A program made the translations under genes and the position numbers. Positions 16,381 to 59,664 of a stretch of DNA of 64,000 nucleotides are shown in pieces (the stretch's first letter is position 1; the number at the start of each line of letters is the position of its first letter). This DNA comes from Octopus sinensis (Eukaryota), in contig NC_043005.1 of the NCBI RefSeq assembly GCF_006345805.1, forward strand, positions 76,260,001-76,324,000. Reading direction: 5' to 3'. Under the pieces are notes generated by a model, which saw nothing but the letters and a program-made list of their open reading frames with translations, searched no databases and was not told the origin of the DNA.

Positions 16381-16666
16381 AAGTCCGCGCTTCCCTTAAT
16401 GCTCTAAGCCCGTGCTTCCCTTAATGCCCTAAGTCCGTACTTCCTTTAATGCCCTAAAGCCGTGCTTCCCTTAATGCCCTATATCCATAGTCCCTTAATG
16501 CCATAAGTTCGTTCTTCCCTTAATGCCCTAAGCCCGTGCTATCCTTAATGCCCTAAAGCTGTACTTCCCTTAATGCCCTAAGCTCGTGCTTCCTTTAAAA
16601 CTCTAAGCCCGTATTTCCCTTAATGCCGTAAGACCGTGCTTCTCTTAATGTCCTAAGCACGTTCTT
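16381..16666. repeat. 25-bp minisatellite, ~11.5 copies
   Basis: Consensus AAGCCCGTGCTTCCCTTAATGCCCT, counted unit by unit. Confidence 0.95.
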
Positions 16667-25390: not shown

Positions 25391-25810
25391 TATTTATTTC
25401 TTTATTGCCCACAGGAGCCTAAACATAGAGGGGACAAACAAAGACAAACAAATGGTTTAAGTCGATTACATCGAGCCCAGTGCGTAACTGGTACTTATTT
25501 AATCGACCTCAAAAGAATGAAAGGCAAAGTCGATCTCGGCGGAGTTTGAACTCAGAACGTAACAGCAGACGAAATACCTATTTCTTTACTACCCACAAGG
25601 GGGTAAACACAGAGAGGACAAAGAAGGACAGACGAACGGATTAAGTCGATTATATCGACCCCAGTGCGAAACTGGTACTTATTTAATCGACCCCGAAAGG
25701 ATAAAAGGCAAAGTTGACCTCAGCGGAATTTGAACTCAGAACGTAGCGGCAGACGAAATACCGCTAAGCACTTGCCCGGCGTGCTAACAATTCTGCCAAC
25801 TCGCCGCTCT
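25391..25810 (-). mobile_element. Full-length dimeric SINE family A
   Basis: Two units, junction at 25578/25579; single 10-bp TSD CGACAACACA at 25381-25390 and 25811-25820. Confidence 0.92.
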
Positions 25811-27790: not shown

Positions 27791-30623
27791 GGGTAGAGAT
27801 AGGAATAGACGGGGATGCAAATGCCTCAGAGACCTGCTCAGACGCTTTCAACTGTCTGACAGGTTCCGACTAGACTACCCGAATGCGCCAACGTGGACAT
27901 GGAGCAACCGCATCGGGTCGTCGAGATCGTATCTAGATAGGATACTGTGTAGGACAGTAGACAGAGATAGCATAGGATATCCACAATTCCACATAGTCAG
28001 CTACACGGATCACAAACTTGTGACATGTACGCTAGACTTAGGTAAGACACTTAGGCAGGGTCCCGGATACTGGAAACTAAACGCGTCTTTCCCATCGAGA
28101 CAGGTTTTCAGAGACCGGATTAGCACACTAGTAAAGAGGGCTTTGACGGGAGCCATCATCAACAACAAATGGTGGTTTGCCCTCAAGAGAGCAGTAAAAG
28201 CAGAAGCGATCAGGTACAGCAAAGCACTAGCCATAGATAGAAATAGAGTAGAGGGTAAGCTAGTTAAGAAGCTAGAAGAGGCAATTAGAAGCGGCTTCGC
28301 ATCCGACGTTTTGGCGGCGAGGTTGGCCCTCGACCAACACTTCAACGCCAAACACGAAGGATGTGCTGTCAGAGCTAGGATGCGTGCTCTAAGGAACGAA
28401 GGTGTTGGAGCCGCGAGAGAGGCCCGGGTGGCAGAGGCGCAACAGGGCAACAAAGCCACCATTCGGTCCTTGGTAGATGAACAGGGGCGCGAATTTCTCG
28501 AGCCAAGTAAAATGTGTGAGGCCTTTCAGCAGCATTTTGCCCGACTGTTCGGAACGAGTGGAGGGCAAGAACGTAGGGTGGACTTCAGTGCCTACCTACA
28601 TAGCCTACCACGACTCTCGACAAGAAAGGCAGGGTGCTGCGAAGGTGCCATCACGGCGGCGGAAGTGCAGGAAGCGATGGCAGAATGCTCGAGGGACAAA
28701 TCACCGGGTTTGGATGGTCTACCCTACGAGCTTTACAATTGTATGCCAGACTTGTTTGGAGATCTCTTGGCGGCGGTGTACTGCAACTGGCAGCAAAACG
28801 GGAGCATTCCTGGTTTTGTGAGCCGAGGAGCCGTAACACTGCTGAAGAAAGATCTAAACAAGGGAAATGTAATAGATAACTTTAGGCCCATCACTCTGCT
28901 TAATGCAGACTTGAAAATTTTGGCCAAGGTGCTAGCCAAGAGGTTGGCGCTTGTCATCGAGAAACTGGTCGACAAGGCGCAAACATGCGCCGTGCCAGGC
29001 CGGACCATCCACAACCTCCACCTGATGCGCTACATCATAGACAGGATAGTTAACGAACCTGGCATGGGTGGGGCGCTGATCAATTTGGATCAATCGAAAG
29101 CTTTCGATAGGGTGGACCATCGATACTTGGAGGCGGTCCTCGGAGCGGCTGGCTTCGGTCCCGTCTTCCGCGGCTGGATAGCCGCTTTGTACAGAGGCAT
29201 CCGTTCGGTAATTCGCGTGAATGGACATCTATCGAGACCCTTCGACATCGCACGTTCGGTCCGTCAGGGATGCCCCCTCTCGTCGCTTCTATACGTATTG
29301 ACTCTCGAGCCATTATTGCGGAAGCTGGCAACCTTGAGAGGCATCCCGCGAGAACTGGGATGCGGGACGAGCGTGTCTGCATACGCGGACGACGTCACCG
29401 TCATAGTGTCTAGCCACGAGCACATCGAGCAGGTCGGCGAGACACTGAAAAACTACGAAGCGGTGACAGGAGCGAAAATCAACCGGGAAAAGTCAGTGGG
29501 CTTGCGACTAGGCACCTGGAGAAGCAAGCCCATGCCGTCCACCAGCGCCTCCGTCGTGGGACGCTGGACCGACGGCCCGGTTGAGTTGCTCGGGGTCTGG
29601 TTTGGTCCGGACCTCCAAGTGGAGAAGAACTGGAACGAGATAACGAGTAGGGTGGTCACTCTCGCCCGGCAATGGGCCGAGAGGAAACTGGGGCGAACCT
29701 GGACGTCGACGAGGAGTACCTGACCCGCCTGTTCAGGACGACTTTCGGGCCAGGGCCCATGGACAACTTCCAGAGATCCCTGGCCTGGCAGTGCTACCGA
29801 GAAGCGCTACCCGTTCGGGAAAAGCTCTACAGACACGGCTCGAGAAACACGGGGCCGACCTGCCCGAGATGCGGTCAGAGCGACGAAACCGTTCTGCACG
29901 CACTCGTGCAGTGTCCAACAATTTCCGACCTGTGGGCTTATGTCGAACAACTGCTGTCACGTGTGGGACGAGTCGTTTATCAGCTGAGTCTATCGTCAAT
30001 ATTGTCACGCCTCCTTCCTTCAAACGGGAAGGAAGAGCTATTTTCATCATCCTTGTGGCTATGGCGAAGGAATGTATCTGGTGGACGCGTCTGAAAGGAT
30101 TGGAGACAAACACTTTCCTCTCTGGTCAATCTCTCATCAACTTCTTCAAGTACCACTTGAAAAGGAAAGTGAGAGTAGAGAGGCAAGTTTTGTCTAGCGA
30201 ATGTTTTAAAAAAAGATGGGTGAATGTAGCAAGAATGGCACGTATGAATGACGAAGCCACCTTGAGCATGATCCTATGAACCCAGAAATTGAAAACAGAG
30301 AGTTGCTTATTATGTGACTCCATTGACCGAGGTTACCGTGGTGTTTTCCGTAGGCTTTTCTTTCCACGGGTAAACCTCACCTGTCCTCCCCTTTACACTT
30401 CATATTGACATTTCTGTGATAACGATCCCCATTGATCAATTTTTTTTTTCTTCCTCTCCCCCTTTTTTTTGTCCTCTTTCTCTCCTTTTACGATCCCTTT
30501 TGATCGAAACTCCCCCTTCCTTTTTTTTTTTTTTTAAACCTTCAAAAGAAAAGCTCTACCTTGTAATTTGTTCTATCTGTGTGCAGCCCTGTGTGGCTAA
30601 TAAAGAAACATATCTATCTATCT
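27791..30623 (+). mobile_element. L1/Tx1-clade LINE copy 3, truncated within the APE endonuclease, with a 487-bp internal deletion
   Basis: Open frame 27792-29723: TWTWS..SYLDRIL and YTDH (APE), WKLNAS, SPGLDGLPYELY, DQSKAFDRVDH, RQGCPLS, YADD; C-terminal CPRC..ETVLHALVQC; (TATC)n tail. Confidence 0.95.
27792..29723 (+). pseudogene. ORF2 fragment (APE C-terminal half plus complete RT core), frameshifted by the deletion at 29690/29691
   Basis: The 567-aa track ORF extends 76 codons upstream in frame without a stop. Confidence 0.88.
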
Positions 30624-32114
30624 AACGAGATAACGAGTAGGGTGGTCACTCTCGCCCGGCAATGGGCCGAGAGGAAACTGTCCCTAAAAGGTCGGGCGGA
30701 GGTGGCGAACACGTACATCGCGTCCATCATCTACTACCGCCTGACCGTCGTACCTTGTCCCGACCCTACCATCACCAAACTAGAACGCATTCTCTTCCGC
30801 TTCTTGTGGAAAGGATGTGTCCCGATGGTCAGGCGATCCATTTGCTGTCAACACCCGTTAAAAGGAGGGCTGGGTAGGCCGTGATTGATGATGCGCAGAC
30901 ACGCGCTGAGACTGAGACATCTCCGGCTCTATGTAGACGACGGTGAACAGGTGTGGTCGCCGTTTGTGAGGTACGCTTTCCCGCAGCTCGTCTCCATGAC
31001 CGAACTGCAGTCGTGGATCAAAAAGAGGCCGAGGAAGGGCGAATGGCACCGCGAGTATCGCGTTGCTCTCAAGCAACTCTGCCGTCCCGGGTCGACCTTG
31101 AGTGACTTCAACACAACCAAAGCATTCTATAGGGGATTAGTGGAGGGGAGGTATGACGACGATCTTGGGGTAAACCTGGGCGTCGACGAGGAATACCTGA
31201 CCCGCCTGCTTGAAACGACTTTCGGGCCGGGACCTATGGACAACTTCAAGAGATCCCTGGCCTGGCGGTGCTACCGAGAAGCGCTACCCGTTCGGGATAA
31301 GCTCTATAGGTATGGCTCGAGAAACACGGGGCCGACCTGCCCGAGATGCGGGCAGAGCGACGAAACCGCTCTGCACGCAATCGTGCAGTGTCCAGCAATT
31401 TCCGACCTGTGGGCCTATGTCGAACGACTGCTGTCACGTGTGGGACGTGTCGGTTTATCAGCCGAGTCTATCGTTAATGTTGTCACGCCTCCTTCCTTCA
31501 AACGGGAAGGAAGAGCTATTTTTATCATCCTTGTGGCTATGGCGAAAGAATGTATCTGGTGGACGCGCCTGAAAGGATTAGAAACAAACACTTTCCTCTC
31601 TGGTCAATCTCTCATCAACTTCTTCAAGTATCACTTGAAGAGGAAAGTGAGAGTAGAGAGGCAAGTTTTGTCTAGTGAATGTTTTAAAAAAAGATGGGTG
31701 AATGTAGCAAGGATGGCACGTATGAATGACGAAGCCACCTTGACTATGATTCTATGAACCGTAAAAATTAATACAGAGAGTTGCTTATTTGCAAAAAAAA
31801 AAGAAATATAACATGTGACTTCATTGACCGAAGTTACCGTGGTCTTTTCTGTAGGCTTTTCTTTCCACGGGTAAACCTCACCTGTCCTCCCCTTTACACT
31901 TCATATTGACATTTCTGTGATAACGATCTCTATTGATCATTTTTTCCTCCCCCCTTTTTAAAAAACATTTATTCACCTCTTTTTTGTCCTCTTTCTTTCC
32001 CTTTACGATCCCTTTTGATCGAAAACCAAACCCCCTTTTTTACCCCCAAAAGAAAAACTCTACCTTGTAATTTGTCCTGTCTGTGTGCAGCCCTGTGTGG
32101 CTAATAAAGAAACA
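30624..32114 (+). mobile_element. L1/Tx1-clade LINE copy 4, 5'-truncated after the RT core
   Basis: LSLKGRAEVAN..RFLW..GGLG.P, one in-frame TGA at 30882-30884, then 290 aa with a CCHC knuckle; (TATC)n at 32115-32196. Confidence 0.95.
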
Positions 32115-36592: not shown

Positions 36593-37735
36593 CTTTCAAA
36601 CAGTGCTTAGAAGAGATATTCCACGGTAATTGTTACAATCACCACGGTCACCTTTGTTTGTGTAAAGCGTAATGATGTTAGCATCCCGCATATCGTGAGG
36701 GACTGTACCCTCTCCCCAGCACTGAGTGTTTTTGCCGGTTTTGATGATCTCTAAGGGGATGACGTTTTTTCCGGGAGCCTTGTTACTTGCTAGGGAGTCA
36801 ATAGCCTTGGTGAGCTCTGCTATAGATAGCAGACTGTCAAGTTTACACATGACTAGCAAGATCTTGACATCCTCCATGCAGCTTCAGCTACCTGGTCTCC
36901 CGTGAGTAGAGATCCTGGTAGTCCTCCACCCATCTCTCCATTTGCTTGCTTTCGTCCTTGATGAGATCTCCAGCAGTTGATTTCAGAGGGGCTGACTTGA
37001 TTGCGGATGGACCGAGGGTCTTCTTCAAACCGGCATACATCCCATGGGTGTCGCCACTGTCAGCAGCTGACTGGATACTCTGACAGATTACCTATTTGCA
37101 CAGCGTCTGGCAGTCAGTTGGGTTTTATTTCTTGCCTTTCTGAGTTCTTCGAGTGACTTTGTAGAAGAATCACTCTTGTATTGCATCAGAGCTGCACGCT
37201 TTGCTTCGATAACTGTTTCCAGCTCTGAGAGCCCAGCACTAAACCAATCTGGGTTTTGCCTTTCTCTCATGCCGAAAGTATCTATTGATGTGGTATACAA
37301 AGCTTCCCTGATATAATTCCACCTGATTTCAGCAGAGGAGGTTGGGCAGCTACTGAGGGCAACCTTGATGGAAACAGCAAAACATTTTCGCACTGTAGGG
37401 TCCGAGGTTCTGGCAGTGTTAATGCGTGGTCGGCCCATTTTCTTGGAGTAATGGACTTTGTTAGACAGAATCCTCACCCTGCTTCTTATTAGTGAATGAT
37501 GTATGTCACCATCCGCACTGTGGTAACTACGGGTCAGTTGAACAGAATTCAGAAAGGATCTTCGCGTCTTGATGAGATCCAGCTGATGCCAGTGGTGAGA
37601 TATTAGATGTCTCCAAGATGCTTTGTGGGATATCTTGTTGGCATAGAATGTGTTGGTGATGCACGGGTTATGGTATGTGCAAAATTCAAGTAGTCGCTGA
37701 CCATTGACATTCATGTTGCCAATACCAAAACACAT
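36593..37735 (-). mobile_element. RTE-clade LINE fragment (endonuclease C-half to start of RT)
   Basis: NGQRLLEFC..ITNTF..HWHQLDLI..YHSAD; KAPG; PHDMRDANIITLYTNKGDRGDCNNYRGISLLS. Confidence 0.92.
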
Positions 37736-37984
37736 ACACTTACATATATACATACATATATATACGATTGATTTGTTTCAGTTCCTGTCTACATATATAT
37801 GTACACACACACACACACACACAACACACACACACCACACAACCCACCACACACACACACACACACACACAAAGATAAATTGATAGATACAACTGAGTGG
37901 GCAAACAAAAATATGAGACACTGCGTAGTGCTTTTTTATATTGTGATAAGCCTGATACTTATTCTATCAGTTTCTTCTTGTGAA

Positions 37985-38431: not shown

Positions 38432-39072
38432 TTTAACATTAAGGATAATCTCTTAATAAGGGATCTTAACAAGAAATTATCGGGCAGCTAGCGTGAAAAC
38501 CTCATAAAAGAAAAGAATTCGAAAATAATTTTTTTCTTGAACAAATTAATTATATCTATATTGTATAGAGGGCATTATTACACATAAATGCCTCACACTA
38601 AGAGGGACAAAAGTCATACTACCAAAATTATACTAATCATACCCAAATGCAGTTTTTCAAAGCAAGACATTTAAAAAATGAATTTAGTTCTGTATCACCA
38701 TGATTTCACATTCAACTTACGTCTTATGATCATCAGCAGAACTGATTCTGAACACATCATAAATAACTACCAACCTTACGTAGCGAAGACGAACAGACAA
38801 CTGCTCACTCCGGCAAGCACATGGAATGTTTATAAATCATATATCCGTTAAATGGCGGGCTTTTTACGAACTGCATGTCGGATAATGAAAAATATTCGGA
38901 ATAATTTAACAATTAAGGATAATCTCTTAATAAGGGATCTTAACAAGAAATTATCGGGCAGCTAGCGTGAAAAACTCTCATAAAAGAAAAGAATTCGAAA
39001 AATTTTTTTTTCTTTTGAACAAATTAATTATATCTATATTGTATAGAGGGCATATTACATATGCCCTCTATA
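38432..39072 (-). repeat. ~1.35 units of a 474-bp tandem repeat carrying a hammerhead (family HH2)
   Basis: A ~165-bp direct repeat with AAGGATAATCTC at 38441 and 38915 (offset 474); TA-rich flanks. Confidence 0.85.
38686..38743 (-). ncRNA. Type I hammerhead ribozyme fold (HH2)
   Basis: Minus strand: AGTTCTG-CTGATGA-[T CAT AA GAC GTAA GTT GA ATG T]-GAAA-TCA TGG TG-ATA-CAGAACT. 7-bp stem I, GNRA-capped stem II, 4-bp stem III, AUA site. Confidence 0.85.
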
Positions 39073-40106: not shown

Positions 40107-42466
40107 GTGAAGACATAGCTCTGTGGTTAGCCTACCGGGCTCGCTATCATGTGATAGAGAGTCTAATTCCCGGACCGGGCTCTGTGTTGTGTTCTTGAGC
40201 AATACTATGGTCATCCCTCAAAGCATATGTAATCTGTTTGACTGACCAGGCAGTTCCCGTTGGGCTTCCCAAGAAGAAGAAACACAAGCCCTGGGTGACG
40301 AAGAAGGTTAAACGAGAACGTCGACTCAGAGATATTGCTTGGGCTGAATTCAAAAATCTGGATTCGACTGCAGCTTTTGAGGTGTACAAAACTCAACGAG
40401 ACCGAGCCGTGAAAATTGAAAGAAAGAACGCTTCAGTTATGAATACAAAATCGCGGCAAATGCCAGTAGCAATCCAAAAACCTTCTTTGCCCATGTCCAG
40501 CGGAATTCCCGCTTGAACAACCAGATTGCAACGTTGGTAGACTCAACAGGTGTATCGATTGAGGACCCTTATCAACAGAGTCAATTATTTGCCGAGGCTT
40601 TTTCAACTATTTTCAAACAAGATGATGGTCGTGAACCCCCTCCATTTGATAGATCGGTACCTCCAATGCTTCGATTGGTCATCACGCGGGACGAATTCAA
40701 ACGTGTTATTCAAGCCTCGATGTCAACAAGGGTCACGGCCCTGACGGCATACACCCACGGGTTATCAAAGCGTTGGCTCCGGTCATCTGCGAGCCCTTAA
40801 CACGACTATTCAATATGTCATTGGCGACGGGTGTTATACCTGCAGACTGGAGAACAGCGATAATCTGCCCAATTTTCAAGAAAGGGAGCCGCGAAGACCC
40901 GCTTAACTACCGACCGGTTTCCCTTACACATCAATCAGCAGCAAGATGTTCGAAACCATCCTTAAGAAAAGTATGATGCTCCACCTCCTAAACACAGCCT
41001 CTATCTCTGATTCCCAACACGGCTTCGTGCCGAAGAGATCATGCTTGACCAACTTACTAGTAATGGAAGAATTGGTGACGCGCATCCTCGATGATAGTGA
41101 TGCTGTTGACATCGTTTTATTGGACTTTGCCAAAGCTTTTGACTCGGTAAACCACCGCCTATTACTTGTCAAGCTTCAAGCATATAGTTTCCATCCGGAT
41201 ATTACGATGGGTTGGTGCCTTCCTCTCAGATCGCTCCTTCCAAGTCCAAGTTAATGGTTCGCGGTCCGACGTCTCCAGTGCGAGCAGTGGCGTGCCTCAA
41301 GGTTCAGTGCTTGGGCCCTTGTTGTTCTTAGTCTTCATAAATGACTTACCCGACGACCTCACGCAACACACCCTTCTATTTGCCGACGATATCAAACTGG
41401 TCGCTCCTCGCGGTAATATAGAGGATCTTCGTCGATGCCTCCACCAAATTTGGAAGTGGTCTAACGATTGGGACCTGTGTCTGAACGTGTCAAAGTGCTG
41501 TCATCTGCCTGTCGGCTCTACTCCTGCAACTCAACTTGATTTCGAGCCGGGTCGTCTGCTGCTGGAGAGGACCGATCAGGTAAAGGACCTGGGTATCTTG
41601 GTGGATTCCTCCTTTTCGCCTTCGGCCCAGTGCGTCCATGCTGCCAACAAAGCACGCGGAATTCTGTTCTTGATTCGACGGTCATTCGGAATGCTCACAG
41701 CAGCCATATTCCTACCACTCTATGTCACGCTGGTGAGACCCATACTGGAGTATGGGATTCAAGCCTCTTCTCCTTATCTCCTCAAAGACATACAGCATCT
41801 CGAAAGAGTCCAGAAGCTGGCTACCCGCATGGTTCCTGGTCTCAAAAATTTGTCCTACGAAGAAAGGCTGAGGACGCTCGACCTTTATTCTCTTGAAAAA
41901 CGCCGCCGCCGTGGTGATCTCATTCTCTCCCACAACATCATAAGCGGAAAGTGTAACCTCTCGAAAGAGCTGTTCTTCACTCCTGCTCCAGAGCGTCGGC
42001 TGCGGGGTCATTCCGAAAAGCTCTACCTGCGACGATTTCATCTCAATCGAAGGAGAGGAGCTTTCTCCGTCCGGGTTGCGGATCCGTGGAACAAGCTGCC
42101 AGACGAGATGGTGAAGATGCCGACGACCGCTTTGTTCAAAGCCTCCCTTGACCTCAAGTGGCCTGAACTCTTTACATGAACACCACCCTGTACTTAACTC
42201 CATGTCCCCCTACATGGCCTTGCTATTTGCTTTTGAGCCAAATTAACTAACTAACTAACTAACTTCACATTGCACCAGTTCACTCAGCTGTAGAAATGAG
42301 TTGCGACGTCACTGGTGCCAAGCTGTATCGGCCTTTGCCTTTCCCTTGGATTACACTGGTGGCATGGAGAGGGGAGGCCGGTATGCACAGGCGACTGCTG
42401 GTCTTCCATAAGCAACCTTGCCCGGACTTGCAATCCCATGGTCATTCATGACCGAAGGAGGTCTGT
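40107..42466 (+). mobile_element. SINE (family C head) split into 40107-40206 and 42264-42466 by a LINE insertion
   Basis: GTTCTTGAGCAATACT resumes as TTCACATTGCACCAGTTCACTCAGCTG, continuous with the family C sequence GAGCAAAACACTTCATTTCACGTTGCTCCAGTCCACTCAGC. Confidence 0.8.
40207..42263 (+). mobile_element. CR1-clade LINE, 5'-truncated (no endonuclease), RT with frameshifts, (TAAC)n tail
   Basis: WSSLK..KPW start; GPDG; YRPVSLT; QHGFVPKRSCLTNLL; LDFAKAFDSVNH; QGSVLGPLLF; FADD; ERVQKLATR..SYEERL..L..LEKRR.RGDLI. Confidence 0.93.
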
Positions 42467-46639: not shown

Positions 46640-48950
46640 GAAATCAAGACGTTTAAATTCTTGTGAGTCGTAGAAATATCGATGATATGATAGATTAGAG
46701 TGTTTAGCGAAGAGATTGGCTTTTATTACGTGAAATGGCCACAAACCTAATTTCCACGCTGAACCCACTTGTAGTTTGCTAAATCCGGCCAAATCCGAAA
46801 TAAGATTAGTGGCTAAGAAAATACTGAGAAATGTTAATAATAAAGAAGGAAAATTACTGGCTTCAGACAGTAGAATAATAATTTCACAGCAGTAGATTGG
46901 TTCAGTAGGATTAAAAATAAGGATAAGGCAAAATTCATTAATTTTGATTTTATTGATTTTTTACCCCGCCATCTCTAGTTCACTACTAGACAAAGCTATT
47001 GAATTTGCTAGATCATTGGTCGATATTGGGAGTATAGAATTGGATTTTATTAGACATGCCAGATTAAACATTATTATTTAGCAAAGTGGGAACTTGGGTA
47101 AAAAAAATCAGGTGGCGATGAGTTATTCGAGGTTTCTATGGGATCGTACGACAGCGCCGATATCTGTGATTTGGTCAGCCCTTATATACTAAATATATTG
47201 AAGAGGAGGCCTCCATCTCATGATGTTGGAGTGTACCGCGATGACGGCTTGTTTGTTTCCAACATGTGTGATGGAAATGCACTTGATAAGATCAGAAAGC
47301 GTCTTATCTTTACGTTTAATCCGTTGGGCTTGAGAATCACAGTAGTCACGAACCTTTCAGCGGTCGAATATTTAGATGTTTCATTAAATCTAAATTCCTC
47401 GTCCTATAAGCCTTACCATAAACTCAATGAAAAACTAACATATTTACACAGACAGTCCTACCACCCTCCTGTTATAATAAAAAATCTAGTAGCAAACATT
47501 AGCAAAAGGGTATCTAATCTCTCGTCCTCTAGGGAAATTTTCGAGACGGCTGCCCCATATTATAACATAGCTTTAACTAATAGTGGATTTAAAGAATTGG
47601 TATATAAACCTTCTTCTAATAATAGCATTAATAAGATACATAAAAAATTAATGATAAAGTATCACATTCTTATAACAATTCTATAAGCAGATCAAGAAAA
47701 ATTATTTGGTTTGCCCTTTCTTTTTCCCTGAATGTAAAGACGAATATTGGCAGAAAATTCCTGGCCCTCCTAGATAAACATTTTTTCTGATGCTCATAGA
47801 TACAGGAAAATATTTAACAGAAATTCCGTCAAATTATCATATAGCTGCTGCTTGAGCATAAAAAGTATTATCACCCGCAAGAACCAACAGGAAACTGAAT
47901 CAGGTTGCAATAGTCGCAACGCGGAATCCTGCCCGCTGGACCAGCAGTGTATGACGAAGTCCATTATATACGGAGCAACCCTTAATAGCAGTGACAGAAC
48001 CGATAAAAGAACATACATCGGACTATGGGAAGGAATTAAAAAAAAAAAAAACACTACGCAGCAACAATGGCGTCGTTCCGCCACAGTGAGAAAAGCAAAA
48101 CCACAAAGTTGGCGAGCCACATTTGGGCCATCAAAGAGAAAAATGTACCACATACGATTAAGCGGAGAGGCGCAGATTTTATTTAGATCCGAGATTTCGA
48201 ACTCGATACTGAACTCGAGGTCAGAAATTTTTAGTGGCTGTAAATACATGTTTAAATATGTCTTAAAAACTGGAAAATTCCACCGATTCTCGATTGGTTG
48301 GTCATTTTTTTTTTTACTTTTCTTTATAATGTCTAGGATCTAGGAATATAGATATAGTTTCTTCTTTCATTGTGTCGATTTCTATCTCATATCTAAATCT
48401 GCATTATATTTTTTCCATCCTTTCATATTCTTTTTGCAATTTTTATATATTATAATTATAGAACTTTATAGCAGACACCATAGAGTTTTCCTACTTATAT
48501 TTTTATGCAATTTATGTATGTTTATTTGTGTACTTGTATATAATTATTTTTGCACTTGTATAATCTTTGTATTGTATATAGCTTATGTATTTGTATATAT
48601 TTCTATAGCTTTCGGATAATTTGTAGATCTGTATATGTTTTCAGATTTTATATGTTGACACGTTTATAATTTAATTTAATTTTATAATTTTTATTATTTA
48701 TAACTTTATCATTTTACTTTATCTTTTTATGTTTGTTTCGATTTAAATTCATCTGAATGCTCTGCATCGGTTCAATTTGGTAGCTCAGCAATAGTGGAAT
48801 CTTCCATTAAATATGGTTGGCTTTAAGATCGCCTCTCACCCGGTCCTCCATTTAAACTTCCTAATTTCATAGAATAATAAGCGCCTGATGAATGTACTTG
48901 CCATGCACGTGAAACTATTAGTAGCACGTGTAATGCATGTGGAGTGAAAC
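46640..48950 (+). mobile_element. Degenerate Penelope-like element 2: RT, Cys-rich linker, GIY-YIG, AT-rich 3' region
   Basis: AFIT..HKPNF..PTC.LLNPAKSEI; FDF.DFYPAI; MGSYDSADICDLV; GVYRDDGL; EYLDVSLNL; YHPP; CN.RN..SCPL..QC; IIY..YIG. Confidence 0.9.
48881..48927 (+). ncRNA. Decayed minimal type I hammerhead at the 3' end of PLE 2
   Basis: GCGC-CTGATGA-ATGTAC(TTGCCAT)GCACGT-GAAAC-TATTA-GTA-GCAC; stems I and II each have a mismatch; stem III is near-palindromic ACTATTAGT. Confidence 0.55.
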
Positions 48951-51300: not shown

Positions 51301-51484
51301 ACCGACATTCAGAGATACAAACATGCAACACCCACACACATATGTATACATACATACATGCATACATACATACATACATACGTACGTACATACATACATA
51401 CGTACATACATACGTAAGTACATACATACATATATACATATATATGTATATATTCTATATATATGCAATATATTTATATGTATG

Positions 51485-51574
<90 letters not shown>

Positions 51575-51596
51575 TATATATACATATATATACATA

Positions 51597-54500
51597 TAGT
51601 CAATTTAGGGTAGCAAAAAAATTCATAGAAATTTATCGCAACCAGCGGTCTGGTGGAAAAGAGAAAATAGTCATCGACTAAATATATAAATATAACAATT
51701 TAGAAGTGACCCCAACAGGTCACTCGTCCACCAGAAAGAGCAGCCATAACTCACACCGCCGCCAAGTAGTAGTAATTCAGAAATTAGGTGAAAATTTAAA
51801 AACATTTACCCTAATTCATCTTTTAGACGTTGCAACGTTTCGTGTCATTAATGATTAAATTAGCTTAATTAAATTAAATTAAGCCAATCTACCATAGGTT
51901 ACACTTCATCAGTAAAAGACCTGGGAGAGACAAATATACACGAGGCGTCTGTATCGATGCCTACGGGATATCTGACTTAAAATTTTCAAGACTGACGTAT
52001 TCGCGCCAAACTTATCAGCAGTAAATATAAACTGCCGATTCAATCTCAGAATTATTCAGAAAATTATCAATTAGTCAATTTAGGGTAGCAAAAAAATTCA
52101 ATAGAAATTTATCGCAACCAGCGGCGGCTGGTGGAAAAGGAAAATAGTCATCGACTAAATATATAAATATAACAATTTAGGAGTGACCCCAACAGGTCAC
52201 TCGTCCACCAGAAAGAGCAGCCATAACTCACACCGCCAAGTAGTAGTAATTCAGAAATTAGGTGAAAATTTAAAAACATTTACCCTAATTCATCTTTTAG
52301 ACGTTGCAACGTTTCTGTGTCATTAATGATTAAATTAGCTTAATTAAATTAAATTAAGCCAATCTACCATAGGTTACACTTCATCAGTAAAAGACCTGGG
52401 AGAGACAAATATACACGAGGCGTCTGTATCGATGCCTACGGGATATCTGACTTAAAATTTTCAAGACTGACGTATTCGCGCCAAACTTATCATCAGTAAA
52501 TATAAACTGCCGATTCAATCTCAGAATTATTCAGAAAATTACAATTAGTCAATTTAGGGTAGCAAAAAAATTCAATAGAAATTTATCGCAACCAGCGGCC
52601 TGGTGGAAAGAGAAAATAGTCATCGACTAAATATATATAATATAACAATTAGGAGTGACCCAACAGGTCACTCGTCCACCAGAAAGAGCAGCCATAACTC
52701 ACACCGCCAAGTAGTAGTAATTCAGAAATTAGGTGAAAATTAAAAAACATTTAACCCTAATTCATCTTTTAGACGTTGCAACGTTTCTGTGTCATTCATT
52801 ATGATTAAATTAGCTTATAAATTAAATTAAGCCAATCTACCATAGGTTACACTTCATCAGTAAAAGACCTGGGAGAGACAAATATACACGAGGCGTCTGT
52901 ATCGATGCCTACGGGATATCTGACTTAAAATTTTCAAGACTGACGTATTCGCGCCAAACTTATCAGCAGTAAATATAAACTGCCGATTCAATCTCAGAAT
53001 TATTCAGAAAATTATCAATTAGTCAATTTAGGGTAGCAAAAAAATTCAGTAGAAATTTATCGCAACCAGCGGCCTGGTGGAAAAGAGAAAATAGTCATCG
53101 ACTAAATATATAAATATAACAATTTAGGAGTGACCCCAACAGGTCACTCGTCCACCAGAAAGAGCAGCCATAACTCACACCGCCAAGTAGTAGTAATTCA
53201 GAAATTAGGTGAAAATTTAAAAAAAAATTTACCCTAATTCATCTTTTAGACGTTGCAACGTTTCTGTGTCATTAATGATTAAATTAGCTTAATTAATAAT
53301 TTAAGCCAATCTACCATAGGTTACACTTCATCAGTAAAAGACCTGGGAGAGACATATACACGAGGCGTCTGTATCGATGCCTACGGATATCTGACTTAAA
53401 ATTTTCAAGACTGACGTATTCGCGCCAAACTTATCAGCAGTAAATATAAACTGCCGATTCAATCTCAGAATTATTCAGAAAATATCATTAGTCAATTTAG
53501 GGTAGCAAAAAAATTCAATAGAAATTTATCGCAACCAGCGGCCTGGTGGAAAAGAGAAAATAGTCATCGACTAAATATATAAATATAACAATTTAGGAGT
53601 GACCCCAACAGGTCCTCGTCCACCAGAAAGAGCAGCCATAACTCACACACAACCGCCAAGTAGTAGTAATTCAGAAATTAGGTGAAAATTTAAAAACATT
53701 TACCCTAATTCATCTTTTAGACGTTGCAACGTTTCTGTGTCATTAATGATTAATTAGCTTAATTAAATTAAATTAAGCCAATCTACCATAGGTTACACTT
53801 CATCAGTAAAAGACCTGGGAGAGACAAATATACACGAGGCGTCTGTATCGATGCCTACGGATATCTGACTTAAAATTTTCAAGACTGACGTATTCGCGCC
53901 AAACTTATCAGCAGTAAATATAAACTGCCGATTCAATCTCAGAATTATTCAGAAAATTATCAATTAGTCAATTTAGGGTAGCAAAAAAATTCAATAGAAA
54001 TTTATCGCAACCAGCGGCCTGGTGGAAAAGAAAAATAGTCATCGACTAATATATAAATATAACAATTTAGGAGTGACCCCAACAGGTCACTCGTCCACCA
54101 GAAGAGCAGCCATAACTCACACACACCGCCAAGTAGTAGTAATTCAGAAATTAGGTGAAAATTTAAAAACATTTACCCTAATTCATCTTTTAGACGTTGC
54201 AACGTTTCTGTGTCATTAATGATTAAATTAGCTTAATTAAATTAAATTAGCCAATCTACCTATAGGTTACACTTCATCAGTAAAAGACCTGGGAGAGACA
54301 AATATACACGAGGCGTCTGTATCGATGCCTACGGGATATCTGACTTAAAATTTTCAAGACTGACGTATTCGCGCCAAACTTATCAGCAGTAAATATAAAC
54401 TGCCGATTCAATCTCAGAATTATTATTCAGAAAATTATCAATTAGTCAATTTAGGGTAGCAAAAAAATTCAGTAGAAATTTATCGCAACCAGCGGCCTGG

Positions 54501-55231
54501 TGGAAAAGAGAAAATAGTCATCGACTAAATATATAAATATAACAATTTAGGAGTGACCCCAACAGGTCACTCGTCCACCAGAAAGAGCAGCCATAACTCA
54601 CACCCCGCCAAGTAGTAGTAATTCAGAAATTAGGTGAAAATTAAAAACATTTACCCTAATTCATCTTTTAGACGTTGCAACGTTTCTGTGTCATTAATGA
54701 TTAAATTAGCTTAATTAAATTAAATTAAGCCAATCTACCATAGGTTACACTTCATCAGTAAAAGACCTGGGGAGACAAAATACACGAGGCGTCTGTATCG
54801 ATGCCTACGGGATATCTGACTTAAAATTTTCAAGACTGACGTATTCGCGCCAAACTTATCAGCAGTAAATATAAACTGCCGATTCAATCTCAGAATTATT
54901 CAGAAAATTATCAATTAGTCATTTAGGGTAGCAAAAAAATTCATAGAAATTTATCGCAACCAGCGGCCTGTGGAAAGAGAAAATAGTCATCGACTAAATA
55001 TATAAATATAACAATTTAGGAGTGACCCCAACAGGTCACTCGTCCACCAGAAAGAGCAGCCATAACTCACACCGCAAGTAGTAGTAATTCAGAAATTAGG
55101 TGAAAATTTAAAAACATTTACCCTAATTCATCTTTTAGACGTTGCAACGTTTCTGTGTCATTAATGATTAAATTAGCTTAATTAAATTAGCTTAATTAAA
55201 TTAGCTTATTAAATTAAATTAAGCCAATCTA
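51597..55231 (-). repeat. Left arm of the ~474-bp hammerhead tandem array (family HH1), ~7.6 units, ribozyme on the minus strand
   Basis: Marker ACGTTGCAACGT at 51827, 52301, 52773, 53250, 53721, 54194, 54672, 55139 (last copy lacks the CTGATGA half). Confidence 0.97.
52293..52394 (-). ncRNA. Type I hammerhead fold, representative minus-strand copy (7 complete in the left arm)
   Basis: Reverse complement of the 56066-56167 motif. Confidence 0.85.
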
Positions 55232-55233
55232 AC

Positions 55234-58200
55234 AAATGTTTTTAAATTTTCACCTAATTTCTGAATTACTACTACTTGGCGGTGTGAGTTATGGCTGCTC
55301 TTTCTGGTGGACGAGTGACCTGTTGGGGTCACTCCTAAATTGTTATATTTATATATTTAGTCGATGACTATTTTCTCTTTTCCACCAGGCCGCTGGTTGC
55401 GATAAATTTCTATTGAATTTTTTTGCTACCCTAAATTGACTAATTGATAATTTTCTGAATAATTCTGAGATTGAATCGGCAGTTTATATTTACTGCTGAT
55501 AAGTTGTGCGCGAATACGTCAGTCTTGAAAATTTTAAGTCAGATATCCCGTAGGCATCGATACAGACGCCTCGTGTATATTTGTCTCTCCCAGGTCTTTT
55601 ACTGATGAGTGTAACCTATGGTAGATTGGCTTAATTTAATTTAATTAAGCTATTTAATCATTAATGACACAGAAACGTTGCAACGTCTAAAAGATGAATT
55701 AGGGTAAATGTTTTTAAATTTTCACCTAATTTCTGAATTACTACTACTTGGCGGTGTGAGTTATGGCTGCTCTTTCTGGTGGACGAGTGACCTGTTGGGG
55801 TCACTCCTAAATTGTTATATTTATATATTTAGTCGATGACTATTTTCTCTTTTCCACCAGGCCGCTGGTTGCGATAAATTCTATTGAATTTTTTTGCTAC
55901 CCTAAATTGACTAATTGATAATTTTCTGAATAATTCTGAGATTGAATCGGCAGTTTATATTTACTGCTGATAAGTTTGGCGCGAATACGTCAGTCTTGAA
56001 AATTTTAAGTCAGATATCCCGTAGGCATCGATACAGACGCCTCGTGTATATTTGTCTCTCCCAGGTCTTTTACTGATGAAGTGTAACCTATGGTAGATTG
56101 GCTTAATTTAATTTAATTAAGCTAATTTAATCATTAATGACACAGAAACGTTGCAACGTCTAAAAGATGAATTAGGGTAAATGTTTTTAAATTTTCACCT
56201 AATTTCTGAATTACTACTACTTGGCGGTGTGAGTTATGGCTGCTCTTTCTGGTGGACGAGTGACCTGTTGGGGTCACTCCTAAATTGTTATATTTATATA
56301 TTTAGTCGATGACTATTTTCTCTTTTCCACCAGGCCGCTGGTTGCGATAAATTTCTATTGAATTTTTTTGCTACCCTAAATTGACTAATTGATAATTTTC
56401 TGAATAATTCTGAGATGAATCGGCAGTTTTATTTACTGCTGATAAGTTGGCGCGAATACGTCAGTCTTGAAAATTTTAAGTCAGATATCCCGTAGGCATC
56501 GATACAGACGCCTCGTGTATATTTGTCTCTCCCAGGTCTTTTACTGATGAAGTGTAACCTATGGTAGATTGGCTTAATTTAATTTAATCATTAATGACAC
56601 AGAAACGTTGCAACGTCTAAAAGATGAATTAGGGTAAATGTTTTTAAATTTTCACCTAATTTCTGAATTACTACTACTTGGCGGTGTGAGTTATGGCTGC
56701 TCTTTCTGGTGGACGAGTGACCTGTTGGGGTCACTCCTAAATTGTTATATTTATATATTTAGTCGATGACTATTTTCTCTTTTCCACCAGGCCGCTGGTT
56801 GCGATAAATTTCTATTGAATTTTTTTGCTACCCTAAATTGACTAATTGATAATTTTCTGAATAATTCTGAGATTGAATCGGCAGTTTATATTTACTGCTG
56901 ATAAGTTTGGCGCGAATACGTCAGTCTTGAAAATTTTAAGTCAGATATCCCGTAGGCATCGATACAGACGCCTCGTGTATATTTGTCTCTCCAGTCTTTT
57001 ACTGATGAAGTGTAACCTATGGTAGATTGGCTTAATTTAATTTAATTAAGCTAATTTAATCATTAATGACACAGAAACGTTGCAACGTCTAAAAGATGAA
57101 TTAGGGTAAATGTTTTTAAATTTTCACCTAATTTCTGAATTACTACTACTTGGCGGTGGTGAGTTATGGCTGCTCTTTCTGGTGGACGAGTGACCTGTTG
57201 GGGTCACTCCTAAATTGTTATATTTATATATTTAGTCGATGACTATTTTCTCTTTTCCACCAGGCCGCTGGTTGCGATAAATTTCTACTGAATTTTTTTG
57301 CTACCCTAAATTGACTAATTGATATTTTCTGAATAATTCTGAGATTGAATCGGCAGTTTATATTTACTGCTGATAAGTTTGGCGCGAATACGTCAGTCTT
57401 GAAAATTTTAAGTCAGATATCCCGTAGGCATCGATACAGACGCCTCGTGTATATTTGTCTCTCCAGGTCTTTTACTGATGAAGTGTAACCTATGGTAGAT
57501 TGCTTAATTTAATTTAATTAAGCTAATTTAATCATTAATGACACAGAAACGTTGCAACGTCTAAAAGATGAATTAGGGTAATGTTTTTAAATTTTCACCT
57601 AATTTCTGAATTACTACTACTTGGCGGTGTGAGTTATGGCTGCTCTTTCTGGTGGACGAGTGACCTGTTGGGGTCACTCCTAAATTTTTATTTATATATT
57701 TAGTCGATGACTATTTTCTCTTTTTCACCAGGCCGCTGGTGCGATAAATTTCTATTGAATTTTTTTGCTACCCTAAATTGACTAATTGATAATTTTCTGA
57801 ATAATCTGAGATTGAATCGGCAGTTTATATTTACTGCTGATAAGTTTGGCGCGAATACGTCAGTCTTGAAAATTTTAAGTCAGATATCCCGTAGGCATCG
57901 ATACAGACGCCTCGTGTATATTTGTCTCTCCCAGGTCTTTTACTGATGAAGTGTAACCTATGGTAGATTGGCTTAATTTAATTTAATTAAGCTAATTAAT
58001 CATTAATGACACAGAAACGTTGCAACGTCTAAGATGAATTAGGGTAAATGTTTTTAAATTTTCACCTAATTTCTGAATTACTACTACTTGGCGGTGTGAG
58101 TTATGGCTGCTCTTTCTGGTGGACGAGTGACCTGTTGGGGTCACTCCTAATTGTTATATTTATATATTTAGTCGATGACTATTTTCTCTTTTCCACCAGG

Positions 58201-59580
58201 CCGCTGGTTGCGATAAATTTCTATTGAATTTTTTTGCTACCCTAAATTGACTAATTGATAATTTTCTGAATAATTCTGAGATTGAATCGGCAGTTTATAT
58301 TTACTGGCTGATAAGTTTGGCGCGAATACGTCAGTCTTGAAAATTTTAAGTCAGATATCCCGTAGGCATCGATACAGACGCCTCGTGTATATTTGTCTCT
58401 CCCAGGTCTTTTACTGATGAAGTGTAACCTATGGTAGATTGGCTTAATTTAATTTAATTAAGCTAATTTAATCATTAATGACACAGAAACGTTGCAACGT
58501 CTAAAAGATGAATTAGGGTAATGTTTTTTAAATTTTCACCTAATTTCTGAATTACTACTACTTGGCGGTGTGAGTTATGGCTGCTCTTTCTGGTGGACGA
58601 GTGACCTGTTTGGGGTCACTCCTAAATGTTATATTATATATTTAGAGTCGATGACTATTTTCTCTTTTCCACCAGGCCGCTGGTTGCGATAAATTTCTAT
58701 TGAATTTTTTTGCTACCCTAAATTGACTAATTGATAATTTTCTGAATAATTCTGAGATTGAATCGGCAGTTTATATTTACTGCTGATAAGTTTGGCGCGA
58801 ATACGTCAGTCTTGAAAATTTTAAGTCAGATATCCCGTAGGCATCGATACAGACGCCTCGTGTATATTTGTCTCTCCCAGTCTTTTACTGATGAAGTGTA
58901 ACCTATGGTAGATTGGCTTAATTTATTTAATTAAGCTAATTTAATCATTAATGACACAGAAACGTTGCAACGTCTAAAAGATGAATTAGGGTAAATGTTT
59001 TTAAATTTTCACCTAATTTCTGATTACTACTACTTGGCGGTGTGAGTTATGGCTGCTCTTTCTGGTGGACGAGTGACCTGTTGGGGTCACTCCTAATTTT
59101 ATATTTATATATTTAGTCGATGACTATTTTCTCTTTTCCACCAGGCCGCTGGTTGCGATAAATTTCTACTGAATTTTTTTGCTACTACCCTAAATTGACT
59201 ATTGATATTTTCTGAATAATCTGAGATTGAATCGGCAGTTTTATTTACTGCTGATAAGTTGTTGCGCGAATACTTCAGTCTTGAAAATTTTAAGTCAGAT
59301 TCCCCGTAGGCATCGATACAGACGCCTCGTGTATATTTGTCTCTCCCAGGTCTTTTACTGATGAAGTGTAACCTATGGTAGATTGGCTTAATTTAATTTA
59401 ATTAAGCTAATTTAATCATTAATGACACAGAAACGTTGCAACGTCTAAAAGATGAATTAGGGTAAATGTTTTTAAATTTTCACCTAATTTCTGAATTACT
59501 ACTACTACTTGGCGGTGTGAGTATTGCTGCTCTTTCTGGTGGACGAGTGACCTGTGGGGTCACCTCCTAAATTGTTATAT
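55234..59580 (+). repeat. Right arm of the HH1 array, ~9.2 units, ribozyme on the plus strand
   Basis: Marker at 55675, 56148, 56605, 57077, 57549, 58017, 58489, 58962, 59433. Confidence 0.97.
56066..56167 (+). ncRNA. Type I hammerhead fold, representative plus-strand copy (9 in the right arm)
   Basis: TCTTTTA(56066-72) CTGATGA(56073-79) A GTGT..ACAC A GAAA(56145-48) CGTTGCAAC GTC(56158-60) TAAAAGA(56161-67). Confidence 0.87.
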
Positions 59581-59612
59581 ATATACATATATATATATAT
59601 TATATATTAATT

Positions 59613-59664
<52 letters not shown>

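What the first reader, a model, noticed from the sequence alone, without database searches (positions are those of the whole stretch)
51597..59580. 8-kb tandem array of a ~474-bp unit, each complete unit carrying a type I hammerhead: retrozyme-like self-cleaving RNA system
Seen: each unit has TCTTTTA-CTGATGA-stem II-GAAA-CGTTGCAAC-GTC-TAAAAGA. That gives a perfect 7-bp stem I, the CUGANGA and GAAA core, an ACGU/ACGU stem III inside a perfect 12-bp palindrome, and a GUC site. 16 complete copies (7 minus, 9 plus), no ORF. Known: type I hammerheads occur in tandem repeats (newt satellite 2, schistosome Sm-alpha, cricket pDo500) and in metazoan non-LTR retrozymes that yield circular RNAs and are thought to be mobilised by Penelope-like elements. 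Inference: read-through transcripts would self-cut into ~474-nt monomers that could circularise and be re-copied into concatemers. I do not know whether this family is already described.
Basis: partly seen in the sequence, partly recalled or inferred. Interest (0 to 1): 0.95.

Follow-up and report, generated by a model that had tools for sequence, protein, structure and literature searches.

The report
Hammerhead-ribozyme retrozyme array in a cephalopod genome
An 8-kb block of about 17 copies of a 474-base non-coding unit, each carrying a self-cutting hammerhead RNA motif, is a new cephalopod example of the known "retrozyme" mobile elements, and its layout looks like a footprint of copying by a Penelope-like retrotransposon.

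Summary
TRF finds two abutting arrays of a 474-bp unit, 7.6 copies on the minus strand and 9.3 on the plus strand. Sixteen complete copies carry a type I hammerhead. The core is intact, stem I is 7 bp, helix III is 4 bp inside a 12-nt palindrome, and the cleavage site is GUC.

- One unpaired A sits on each side of helix II, which also carries a 55-nt extension.
- No Rfam hammerhead model matches, even at E<=10.

That A.A arrangement is typical of the lineage rather than a defect. The same layout occurs in a second, unrelated 478-bp hammerhead element in the window (about 38.4-39.1 kb). [quoted passage not shown]

All these elements abut (TA)n microsatellites. The two arms of the array have their 3' ends outward and their truncated 5' ends joined at the centre. 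This is the tandem/inverted, microsatellite-targeted pattern published for PLE insertions.

The host is a cephalopod, judged from LINE homologues. Verdict: a new member of a known kind, the non-LTR retrozymes. Cleavage, circular RNA and mobilisation are inferred, not shown.

The parts
51597..55189 (-). Left arm: 7.6 units of the 474-bp repeat, RNA sense on the minus strand. Its 3' end (unit position 227) is at 51597, against (AT)n. Hammerhead C17 positions: 51826, 52300, 52772, 53249, 53720, 54193, 54671, plus a truncated copy at 55138.
55234..59585 (+). Right arm: 9.3 units, RNA sense on the plus strand. Its 3' end (unit position about 133, inside the unit's own TA-rich tract) is at about 59585, against (TA)n. 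C17 positions: 55687, 56160, 56617, 57089, 57561, 58029, 58501, 58974, 59445.
55139..55240 (.). Central head-to-head junction of the two 5'-truncated arms. The minus arm starts at unit position 408 (inside helix II) and the plus arm at unit position 19. A 14-nt motif ATTAAATTAGCTTA is present 3.6 times at 55167-55216. The junction is not mirror-symmetric.
   Evidence: the MIR7533 'hit' is only this long hairpin
56066..56167 (+). Representative type I hammerhead:
- stem I 5' strand 56066-56072
- CUGAUGA 56073-56079
- extra A 56080
- helix II GUGU 56081-56084 paired with ACAC 56140-56143, with a 55-nt distal extension 56085-56139
- extra A 56144
- GAA 56145-56147
- helix III and loop (12-nt palindrome ACGUUGCAACGU) 56148-56159
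- C17 at 56160, predicted cut between 56160 and 56161
- stem I 3' strand 56161-56167
51345..51598 (.). Left flank: (ATAC)n followed by (AT)n microsatellite. Presumed half of the insertion target.
59576..59660 (.). Right flank: (TA)n microsatellite. Presumed other half of the target.
47384..48265 (+). Decayed remnant of a Penelope-like element: RT C-terminus, Cys-rich linker and a GIY-YIG-like domain in one frame, with internal stops.
   Evidence: tblastn E=4e-36 to P0001
48878..48930 (+). Decayed hammerhead at the 3' end of the PLE remnant, 25 nt before a (TA)n tract at about 48955. Core CUGAUGA...GAAA, helix III ACU/AGU as in L001 and L003, stem I paired at 5 of 7 positions.
38435..39066 (-). 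Second, sequence-unrelated retrozyme-like element. It spans 1.32 units of 478 bp between two TA-rich microsatellites. One intact type I hammerhead lies at 38743->38686, with the cut predicted after 38693.

Best explanation
What it is. The block is a non-LTR retrozyme locus: a non-coding, non-autonomous retroelement whose 474-nt unit encodes one type I hammerhead ribozyme on one strand. The host is a cephalopod genome.

Proposed life cycle (inferred):
1. The array is transcribed into multimeric RNA.
2. Hammerheads of neighbouring units pair through the 12-nt palindrome of helix III, forming a double hammerhead, and cut after C17. [quoted passage not shown]
3. A host ligase, or the ribozyme itself, circularises them into stable, highly base-paired circles.
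4. The RT/GIY-YIG endonuclease of a Penelope-like element copies the circular or multimeric RNA at a break in a (TA)n microsatellite.

How this locus probably formed (inferred). Both 3'-OH ends of one break primed reverse transcription (twin priming). Each went several times round the template. The two cDNAs were then joined at their 5'-truncated ends. This would give two inverted arrays with 3' ends outward.

Shown here:
- the array, the motif and its statistical non-randomness
- the architecture shared with PLE hammerheads
- the microsatellite flanks
- the 3'-out/5'-in geometry
- the predicted RNA stability

Inferred: transcription, cleavage, circularisation, the identity of the mobilising enzyme, and twin priming.
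For: Array and motif. TRF and the exact pattern confirm the array and 16 motifs. Chance is negligible: 0 strict hits in 40 Mb of random sequence.

Fold. All invariant core positions are present. The hammerhead fold lies within 0.7 kcal/mol of the MFE and makes up about 10% of the ensemble without any tertiary term. The helix III hairpin is worth -0.9 kcal/mol, against -17.9 for the inter-unit 12-bp duplex.

Variation. The core and stems are less variable among copies than the rest: 3 of 47 versus 87 of 427 variable columns (Fisher p=0.018). Distal helix II is the most variable part and tolerates 14-nt copy-number changes.

RNA stability. The circular monomer folds at -127.6 kcal/mol with z=-5.7 and 64% of bases paired. 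The complementary strand gives -96.3 and z=-3.8. GC is 35% and there is no ORF.

Shared architecture. One nucleotide on each side of helix II is also seen in:
- a second unrelated 478-bp element in the window (U.U)
- PLE 3' ends on L001 and L003 (U.U)
- the window's PLE remnant (A.U)

Across the four intact motifs, 53 of 53 stem cells pair, and 13 of 15 stem positions show changes on both sides.

Target. All of these elements end next to (TA)n.

Literature:
- Retrozymes are tandem type I hammerhead repeats with low GC that yield circular RNA (PMC7229834).
- A U.U mismatch at the base of helix II in axolotl HHR_Amex2 still cleaves, and cleaves better as a dimer (PMC7229834).
- PLE hammerheads have an extra nucleotide after A9, a larger helix II and a palindromic helix III (PMC4209133).
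- PLE insertions form partial tandems with an adjacent inverted 5'-truncated copy and prefer microsatellites, including (TA)n (PMC8557442).
- Retrozymes derive from PLE pLTRs (bioRxiv 10.64898/2026.07.22.740005).

Template. The insertion ends are not at the cleavage site, and both elements exceed one unit. This implies a circular or multimeric template.
Against: - No Rfam hammerhead model matches, even at E<=10 on a single motif.
- The A.A at the base of helix II, or the second A before G12, has no tested precedent that I could find.
- Canonical loop-loop tertiary contacts cannot be recognised.
- Copies within the array are near-identical, and most differences are singleton indels that look like long-read errors. 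The array itself therefore gives no covariation.
- The cross-element covariation is partly built in, because the motifs were found with a pairing descriptor.
- No other genomic copy of this family could be retrieved.
- The unit has no sequence similarity to the neighbouring PLE remnant.
- Arm variants shared at non-mirrored positions do not fit rolling copying of a single circle without later conversion or a heterogeneous template.
- There are no expression data.
Confidence: 0.78

Rival explanations
1. It is an ordinary satellite DNA. The array grew and was inverted purely by DNA-level processes: unequal crossing-over, replication slippage, or fold-back/break-induced replication at a fragile (TA)n tract. 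The hammerhead is transcribed cargo, as in the classical views of newt satellite 2 or cricket pDo500, and this locus did not arise by reverse transcription.
For: - The copies are highly homogeneous, and variants are shared between arms at non-mirrored positions, as expected from conversion or unequal exchange.
- The 14-nt slippage variants inside helix II (0, 1 or 3 copies) show DNA-level instability.
- The right end lies in the unit's own TA-rich tract, which could recombine with (TA)n.
Against: - A second, unrelated hammerhead element of 1.3 units also sits between TA microsatellites. PLE 3' ends do the same, which points to a shared insertion mechanism.
- The 3'-out/5'-in orientation with non-mirrored truncation points (unit positions 408 and 19) matches PLE-type insertions (PMC8557442) rather than a fold-back duplication.
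- The classical hammerhead satellites have themselves been reinterpreted as retrozymes (PMC7229834).
Confidence: 0.12
2. The motif is a dead or coincidental hammerhead look-alike. The insertions next to helix II and the long helix II abolish catalysis, and the repeat has no RNA-level function.
For: - No Rfam hammerhead hit.
- The non-canonical 10.1/11.1 arrangement.
- The thermodynamic MFE of the isolated motif is a competing fold.
Against: - Chance expectation is below 1e-4 per unit.
- The same arrangement recurs with fully covarying stems in independent elements.
- A U.U mismatch at the same place is catalytically tolerated in axolotl retrozymes (PMC7229834).
- Core and stems are the least variable part of the unit.
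Confidence: 0.07
3. The inverted (palindromic) arrangement is an assembly or long-read artefact, such as a chimeric fold-back read, and the true locus is a single direct array.
For: - The differences between copies are dominated by singleton indels, typical of error-prone long reads: 83 of 113 variable columns contain gaps.
- PLE-type tandem/inverted structures are known to trouble assemblies (PMC8557442).
Against: - The junction is not a mirror point (unit position 408 joined to position 19).
- The arms differ in length and in their outer end points (unit positions 227 and 133).
- The variants are not mirrored.
- The outer flanks are different unique sequences.
- This rival concerns only the geometry, not the identity of the repeat.
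Confidence: 0.08

Closest known systems
Metazoan non-LTR retrozymes (Cervera & de la Pena 2020, PMC7229834; e.g. Mytilus galloprovincialis, Acropora millepora, axolotl Rtz_331/Rtz_353)
   Same: [quoted passage not shown]
- Low GC (35%), no ORF, strongly self-paired monomer.
- Co-occurrence with PLEs.
- Weak helix III with a palindromic loop, which favours dimeric cleavage.
- A mismatch at the base of helix II, as in axolotl HHR_Amex2 (U.U there, A.A here).
   Different: - The unit (474 bp) is at or above the upper end of the 150-450 bp first reported, though within the 51-972 bp of the 2026 vertebrate survey.
- Helix II carries a 55-nt extension.
- No recognisable canonical loop1-loop2 contacts.
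- Rfam models fail.
- The host group (cephalopods) is not among the examples in the papers I could search.
- Expression and circular RNA are not shown here.
Hammerheads of Penelope-like elements (Cervera & de la Pena 2014, PMC4209133) and PLE insertion architecture (Craig et al. 2021, PMC8557442)
   Same: - Extra nucleotide between A9 and helix II, larger helix II, palindromic helix III.
- Insertion into (TA)n.
- Partial tandems with an inverted 5'-truncated copy.
- PLE relatives L001 and L003 carry hammerheads with the same 1x1 flank at helix II.
   Different: - There is no RT/endonuclease ORF in or next to the array, so it is not an autonomous PLE.
- Helix III here is a real 4-bp stem, and stem I has 7 bp. 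The 'minimal' PLE motifs lack helix III and have a short stem I.
- No sequence similarity to the PLE remnant in the window.
Classical hammerhead satellites: newt satellite 2, Schistosoma Sm-alpha, Dolichopoda pDo500 (PMC2837043)
   Same: - Type I hammerhead in every unit of a tandem repeat.
- pDo500 units are 463-505 bp, the same size class.
- A double-hammerhead mechanism has been proposed.
   Different: - Unrelated sequence.
- Those motifs have a canonical G10.1-C11.1 directly at the core and a short helix II.
- They form very large satellite blocks. This locus is a 17-unit insertion inside a microsatellite.

Membership tests
Hammerhead ribozyme, type I | Invariant core: C3 U4 G5 A6 N7 G8 A9, G12 A13 A14, A15.1-U16.1 pair, H17 (not G) | tested here: met
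   CUGAUGA, GAA, A...U and C17 are present and identical in all 16 complete copies.
Hammerhead ribozyme, type I | Three helices around the core, with helix I open-ended | tested here: met
   Stem I has 7 bp (plus a G.U), helix II 4 bp plus an extension, helix III 4 bp. The constrained fold is -31.0 kcal/mol against an MFE of -31.7.
Hammerhead ribozyme, type I | Helix II starts directly at the core with the quasi-conserved G10.1-C11.1 pair | tested here: not met
   One A lies on each side between the core and the GUGU/ACAC stem in 14 of 16 copies. The same 1x1 arrangement recurs in related elements. An analogous U.U mismatch occurs in the active axolotl HHR_Amex2 (PMC7229834).
Hammerhead ribozyme, type I | Match to the curated covariance models (Rfam Hammerhead_1 and relatives) | tested here: not met
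   No hammerhead family at gathering score or at E<=10, including on a single 116-nt motif.
Hammerhead ribozyme, type I | Stems supported by compensatory changes among relatives | tested here: inconclusive
   There is no informative variation within the array. Across four intact motifs of the same architecture, 53 of 53 stem cells pair and 13 of 15 positions change on both sides. However, the motifs were partly selected by a pairing descriptor, and their homology is not proven.
Hammerhead ribozyme, type I | Loop-loop tertiary contacts between helices I and II | tested here: inconclusive
   Both helices carry a predicted 5x5 internal loop, but at non-canonical distances from the core. No known contact motif was recognised.
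Hammerhead ribozyme, type I | Site-specific self-cleavage 3' of position 17 | not testable with these tools
   Needs a transcription/cleavage assay.
Non-LTR retrozyme | Short tandem repeats, each unit with a type I hammerhead; no LTRs | tested here: met
Non-LTR retrozyme | Low GC (<45%), non-coding | tested here: met
   GC 35%. No ORF longer than 65 aa within the array. The six-frame translation finds no protein.
Non-LTR retrozyme | Monomer RNA highly self-paired | tested here: met
   Circular MFE -127.6 kcal/mol, z=-5.7, 64% of bases paired. This is a prediction only.
Non-LTR retrozyme | Co-occurrence with Penelope-like elements in the genome | tested here: met
   A PLE remnant lies at 47384-48265 with its own hammerhead at 48878-48930.
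Non-LTR retrozyme | Expressed as unit-length linear and circular RNA | not testable with these tools
Autonomous Penelope-like element | RT plus GIY-YIG endonuclease ORF between pseudo-LTRs | tested here: not met
   There is no ORF in the array. The nearest PLE coding remnant is 3.3 kb away and unrelated in sequence.

The most novel reading that the evidence does not exclude
The locus is a direct fossil of twin-primed, rolling reverse transcription of a circular ribozyme RNA by a PLE enzyme at a (TA)n break. In addition, the PLE lineage and its retrozymes use a distinct, catalytically active hammerhead subclass that current covariance models cannot see. This subclass has a 1x1 non-Watson-Crick pair at the base of helix II and tolerates a helix II extension of more than 50 nt. 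Finally, the three retrozyme 3' junctions all lie 4-7 nt after a CCTWAAT(T)G motif. That would point to a specific priming or recognition site on the RNA, a feature not described for retrozymes.
Probability: 0.3. Interest if true: 0.6.

Novelty: new member of a known kind. Interest (0 to 1): 0.4.

Why it matters
Retrozymes and their link to Penelope-like elements are established ideas, but the integration step has not been seen directly.

This window offers a compact natural example of that step:
- two unrelated hammerhead repeat families of the same size
- a PLE remnant with a matching hammerhead type
- all of them inserted in TA microsatellites
- one of them showing the 3'-out/5'-in inverted arrays expected from priming at both ends of a break

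It also shows that a whole subclass of animal hammerheads escapes Rfam-based annotation. These have a mismatch at the base of helix II and a long helix II. Genome scans that rely on those models therefore under-count such elements.

For cephalopod genomics, it flags an unannotated class of repeats that may produce circular RNA.

Tried and rejected
- Rfam at gathering score and at E<=10 gave no hammerhead or other ribozyme. The strong MIR7533 and mir-297 'hits' are the palindromic junction and the flanking microsatellite, not miRNA genes.
- Exact-pattern scans for the hammerhead in metagenome, viral and prokaryotic genome collections gave 0 hits.
- Exact look-ups of three unit-encoded ORFs were not on record.
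- A six-frame pseudo-protein of the unit, searched against 5.8 billion proteins, found nothing. No other copy of the family could be fetched, so within-family covariation could not be tested.
- blastn of the unit against the rest of the window gave only TA-rich chance matches.
- Global alignment of the 474-bp and 478-bp units showed no similarity (z=0.9).
- The fold-back artefact idea was rejected for the reasons given under that rival.
- A tRNA scan for SINE heads found none.
- Pfam did not recognise the PLE remnant or P0001. The PLE assignment rests on motif reading, on the RVT_1 gene upstream on L001, and on the published PLE hallmarks (3' hammerhead and a (TA)n target).
- A relaxed-descriptor hit at 41868 (stem I of 2 bp, inside an RT ORF) was judged spurious.


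Full report
**Observation**

Tandem Repeats Finder reports two abutting arrays: 51597-55189 (period 474, 7.6 copies) and 55234-59585 (period 472, 9.3 copies). Both show 96% matches and 2% indels. The arrays are in opposite orientation.

The exact string CTGATGA-N(40-70)-GAAACGTTGCAACGTC occurs 16 times, 7 on the minus and 9 on the plus strand. It occurred 0 times in 100 shuffles. A 17th copy at the centre keeps only the 3' half of the motif.

The cleavage-site-to-cleavage-site monomers are 457-478 nt, with a consensus of 474 nt and 35% GC. No ORF within the array exceeds 65 aa.

Most differences between copies are singleton indels: 83 of 113 variable columns contain gaps. This looks like long-read error on an essentially homogeneous array.

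**The motif**

Reading 56066-56167 on the plus strand:

| Element | Sequence |
|---|---|
| Stem I, 5' strand | UCUUUUA |
| Core | CUGAUGA |
| Extra nucleotide | A |
| Helix II, 5' strand | GUGU |
| Helix II extension | 55 nt |
| Helix II, 3' strand | ACAC |
| Extra nucleotide | A |
| Core | GAA |
| Helix III and loop | ACGU-UGCA-ACGU |
| Position 17 | C |
| Stem I, 3' strand | UAAAAGA |

All invariant hammerhead positions are present.

A descriptor I wrote requires the core, stem I of at least 5 bp, helix II of at least 4 bp (allowing one mismatch at its base) and helix III of at least 3 bp. It finds 14 of the 16 copies and nothing else in the window. First-order Markov sequence gave 1-3 such hits per 20 Mb. 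It gave none in 40 Mb at the observed stem lengths. A chance origin inside one 474-bp unit is therefore below about 1e-4.

The three-way-junction fold is -31.0 kcal/mol against an MFE of -31.7, and it makes up about 10% of the ensemble. The helix III hairpin alone is worth only -0.9 kcal/mol. Two units pairing through the 12-nt palindrome give -17.9 kcal/mol. As in newt, viroid and PLE hammerheads, cleavage as a double hammerhead in multimeric transcripts is therefore the likely mode (PMC4209133, PMC6155905).

**Evidence against, stated plainly**

No Rfam hammerhead model matches at gathering score or at E<=10. This holds even when a single 116-nt motif with the shortest helix II is searched alone. 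The long helix II and the two extra nucleotides probably explain the failure, but I could not test that with an edited sequence.

**Why the odd base of helix II is probably not a defect**

A relaxed scan found a second hammerhead on the minus strand at 38743-38686. It lies in a different element of 1.32 units of 478 bp between two TA-rich microsatellites. This element is unrelated in sequence to the 474-bp family (z=0.9). Its physical properties are nevertheless nearly the same: GC 32% and a circular fold of -119 kcal/mol with z=-5.2.

Its hammerhead reads AGUUCUG-CUGAUGA-U-CAU...AUG-U-GAAA-UCAUGGUGA-U-A-CAGAACU. Again there is one nucleotide on each side of helix II.

The window also holds a decayed Penelope-like element (PLE). 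RT C-terminus, Cys-rich linker and a GIY-YIG-like region lie at 47384-48265 in one frame with stops, with E=4e-36 to protein P0001. About 600 nt downstream is a decayed hammerhead (48878-48930), followed 25 nt later by (TA)n.

The contig encoding P0001 (L001) has an RVT_1 gene, the P0001 gene and a perfect type I hammerhead at 5302-5349. That motif reads GUUUUGA-CUGAAGA-U-UGCC-GUAA-GGCA-U-GAAA-CUUUAAG-U-A-UCAAAAC. An (AT)n tract follows about 100 nt later.

Two further relatives fetched with P0001 show the same pattern. L003 has an intact motif at 1307-1346 followed by (TA)n. L002 has a decayed one.

Across the four intact motifs, every one of 53 stem cells is paired. Thirteen of 15 stem positions show changes on both sides, while the core, A15.1-U16.1 and the 1x1 flank of helix II are constant. 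This covariation is partly built in, because a pairing descriptor was used. However, L001 and L003 were found from the core pattern and their position alone.

Published work supports the reading:
- PLE hammerheads have an extra nucleotide after A9, a larger helix II and a palindromic helix III (PMC4209133).
- The axolotl retrozyme motif HHR_Amex2 has a U.U mismatch at the base of helix II. It still cleaves 22% in one hour as a monomer, and much better as a dimer (PMC7229834).

**Within-array variation**

Core and stems have 3 variable columns of 47, against 87 of 427 elsewhere (p=0.018). The distal part of helix II is the most variable, with 26 of 55 variable columns. It carries 0, 1 or 3 copies of a 14-nt motif in different units. 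This fits a dispensable peripheral extension, but the error profile of AT-rich sequence could contribute.

**Geometry of the locus**

Both arms point outward. The minus arm ends with its 3' end at 51597 (unit position 227), against (AT)n. The plus arm ends at about 59585 (unit position about 133, inside the unit's own TA-rich tract), against (TA)n. The two 5' ends meet at the centre at unit positions 408 and 19.

A free 3'-OH on each side of a double-strand break, each priming cDNA synthesis on a sense RNA, would give exactly this strand arrangement.

Neither outer end is at the ribozyme cut site, and both elements are longer than one unit. The template was therefore multimeric or circular. 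This fits the model in PMC7229834, in which a target-primed circular RNA gives tandem cDNA copies.

It also fits the published PLE insertion pattern of partial tandems, an adjacent inverted 5'-truncated copy, and a bias for microsatellites including (TA)n (PMC8557442).

The junction is not a mirror point, the arms differ in length and end points, and shared variants are not mirrored. A simple fold-back read artefact is therefore unlikely, though only raw reads can settle this. Shared variants at non-mirrored positions also mean that the story is not simply one circle copied twice. Later conversion or a heterogeneous template is needed.

**Host**

A fairly intact LINE RT (28020-29723) has its best named relatives in Argonauta hians (68% identity) and Acanthosepion pharaonis. 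The window is therefore from a cephalopod, probably an octopod. The best hit of any kind is only 70% identical, so the source genome itself seems absent from the protein collection.

PLEs are documented in octopus genomes (PMC13282606). I found no paper in the searchable library that links hammerheads or retrozymes to cephalopods. Molluscs (mussels) are covered in PMC7229834.

**Verdict**

It is a new member of a known kind, the non-LTR retrozymes. Three details are instructive:
- a hammerhead subclass that Rfam misses
- a clean twin-primed-looking insertion in a (TA)n tract
- a second, unrelated family of the same size nearby

Catalysis, circular RNA and mobilisation remain to be shown.

Noticed in passing
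window 38435-39066 (minus strand): A second retrozyme-like element: 1.32 units of 478 bp with one intact type I hammerhead (38743->38686), between TA-rich microsatellites. It is unrelated in sequence to the 474-bp family but has the same size, GC and predicted RNA stability.
   Followed up: yes
window 47384-48265 and 48878-48930 (plus strand): A decayed Penelope-like element (RT C-terminus plus a GIY-YIG-like domain, with in-frame stops). It has a decayed hammerhead near its 3' end, 25 nt before a (TA)n tract.
   Followed up: yes
window 59565-59585, 51597-51612, 38435-38450: All three retrozyme 3' junctions lie 4-7 nt after a CCTWAAT(T)G motif: CCTAAATTGTTATAT|, CCTAAATTGACTA| and CCTTAAT-GTTAAAC|. 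The PLE 3' ends instead read ...GCA|TATATA (window 48954, L001 5447). This is a post hoc observation. It could mark a priming or recognition site, or it could be chance.
   Followed up: partly
L001 5302-5349; L003 1307-1346; L002 about 1405-1450: PLE relatives from unrelated public contigs carry type I hammerheads with one U on each side of helix II (decayed in L002). In L001 and L003 a (TA)n tract follows shortly after. No hammerhead family was listed for L001 at E<=1 in Rfam.
   Followed up: partly
window 28020-31757 (plus strand): A LINE-type retrotransposon: an RVT_1 ORF of 567 aa followed by zf-RVT ORFs. Its C-terminal part is duplicated (29672-30279 and 30885-31757 share sequence). Best relatives are in cephalopods.
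   Followed up: partly
window 41166-42179 (plus) and 37088-37753 (minus): One further retrotransposon fragment (RVT_1, 337 aa) and a 221-aa ORF with no Pfam hit. The latter was not examined further.
   Followed up: no
window 25395-25762: Two tandem copies (85% matches) of a 184-bp unit that resembles, from memory, a cephalopod SINE. ARAGORN finds no tRNA head in it.
   Followed up: partly
window 8553-9424 and 16371-16666: A 424-bp unit repeated twice (98% matches), and a 25-bp minisatellite of 11.9 copies. Neither was examined.
   Followed up: no
window, throughout: Very high density of (TA)n, (TATC)n, (AC)n and (ATAC)n microsatellites: 116 TRF rows in 64 kb. This gives abundant potential (TA)n targets for PLE-type insertion.
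   Followed up: no
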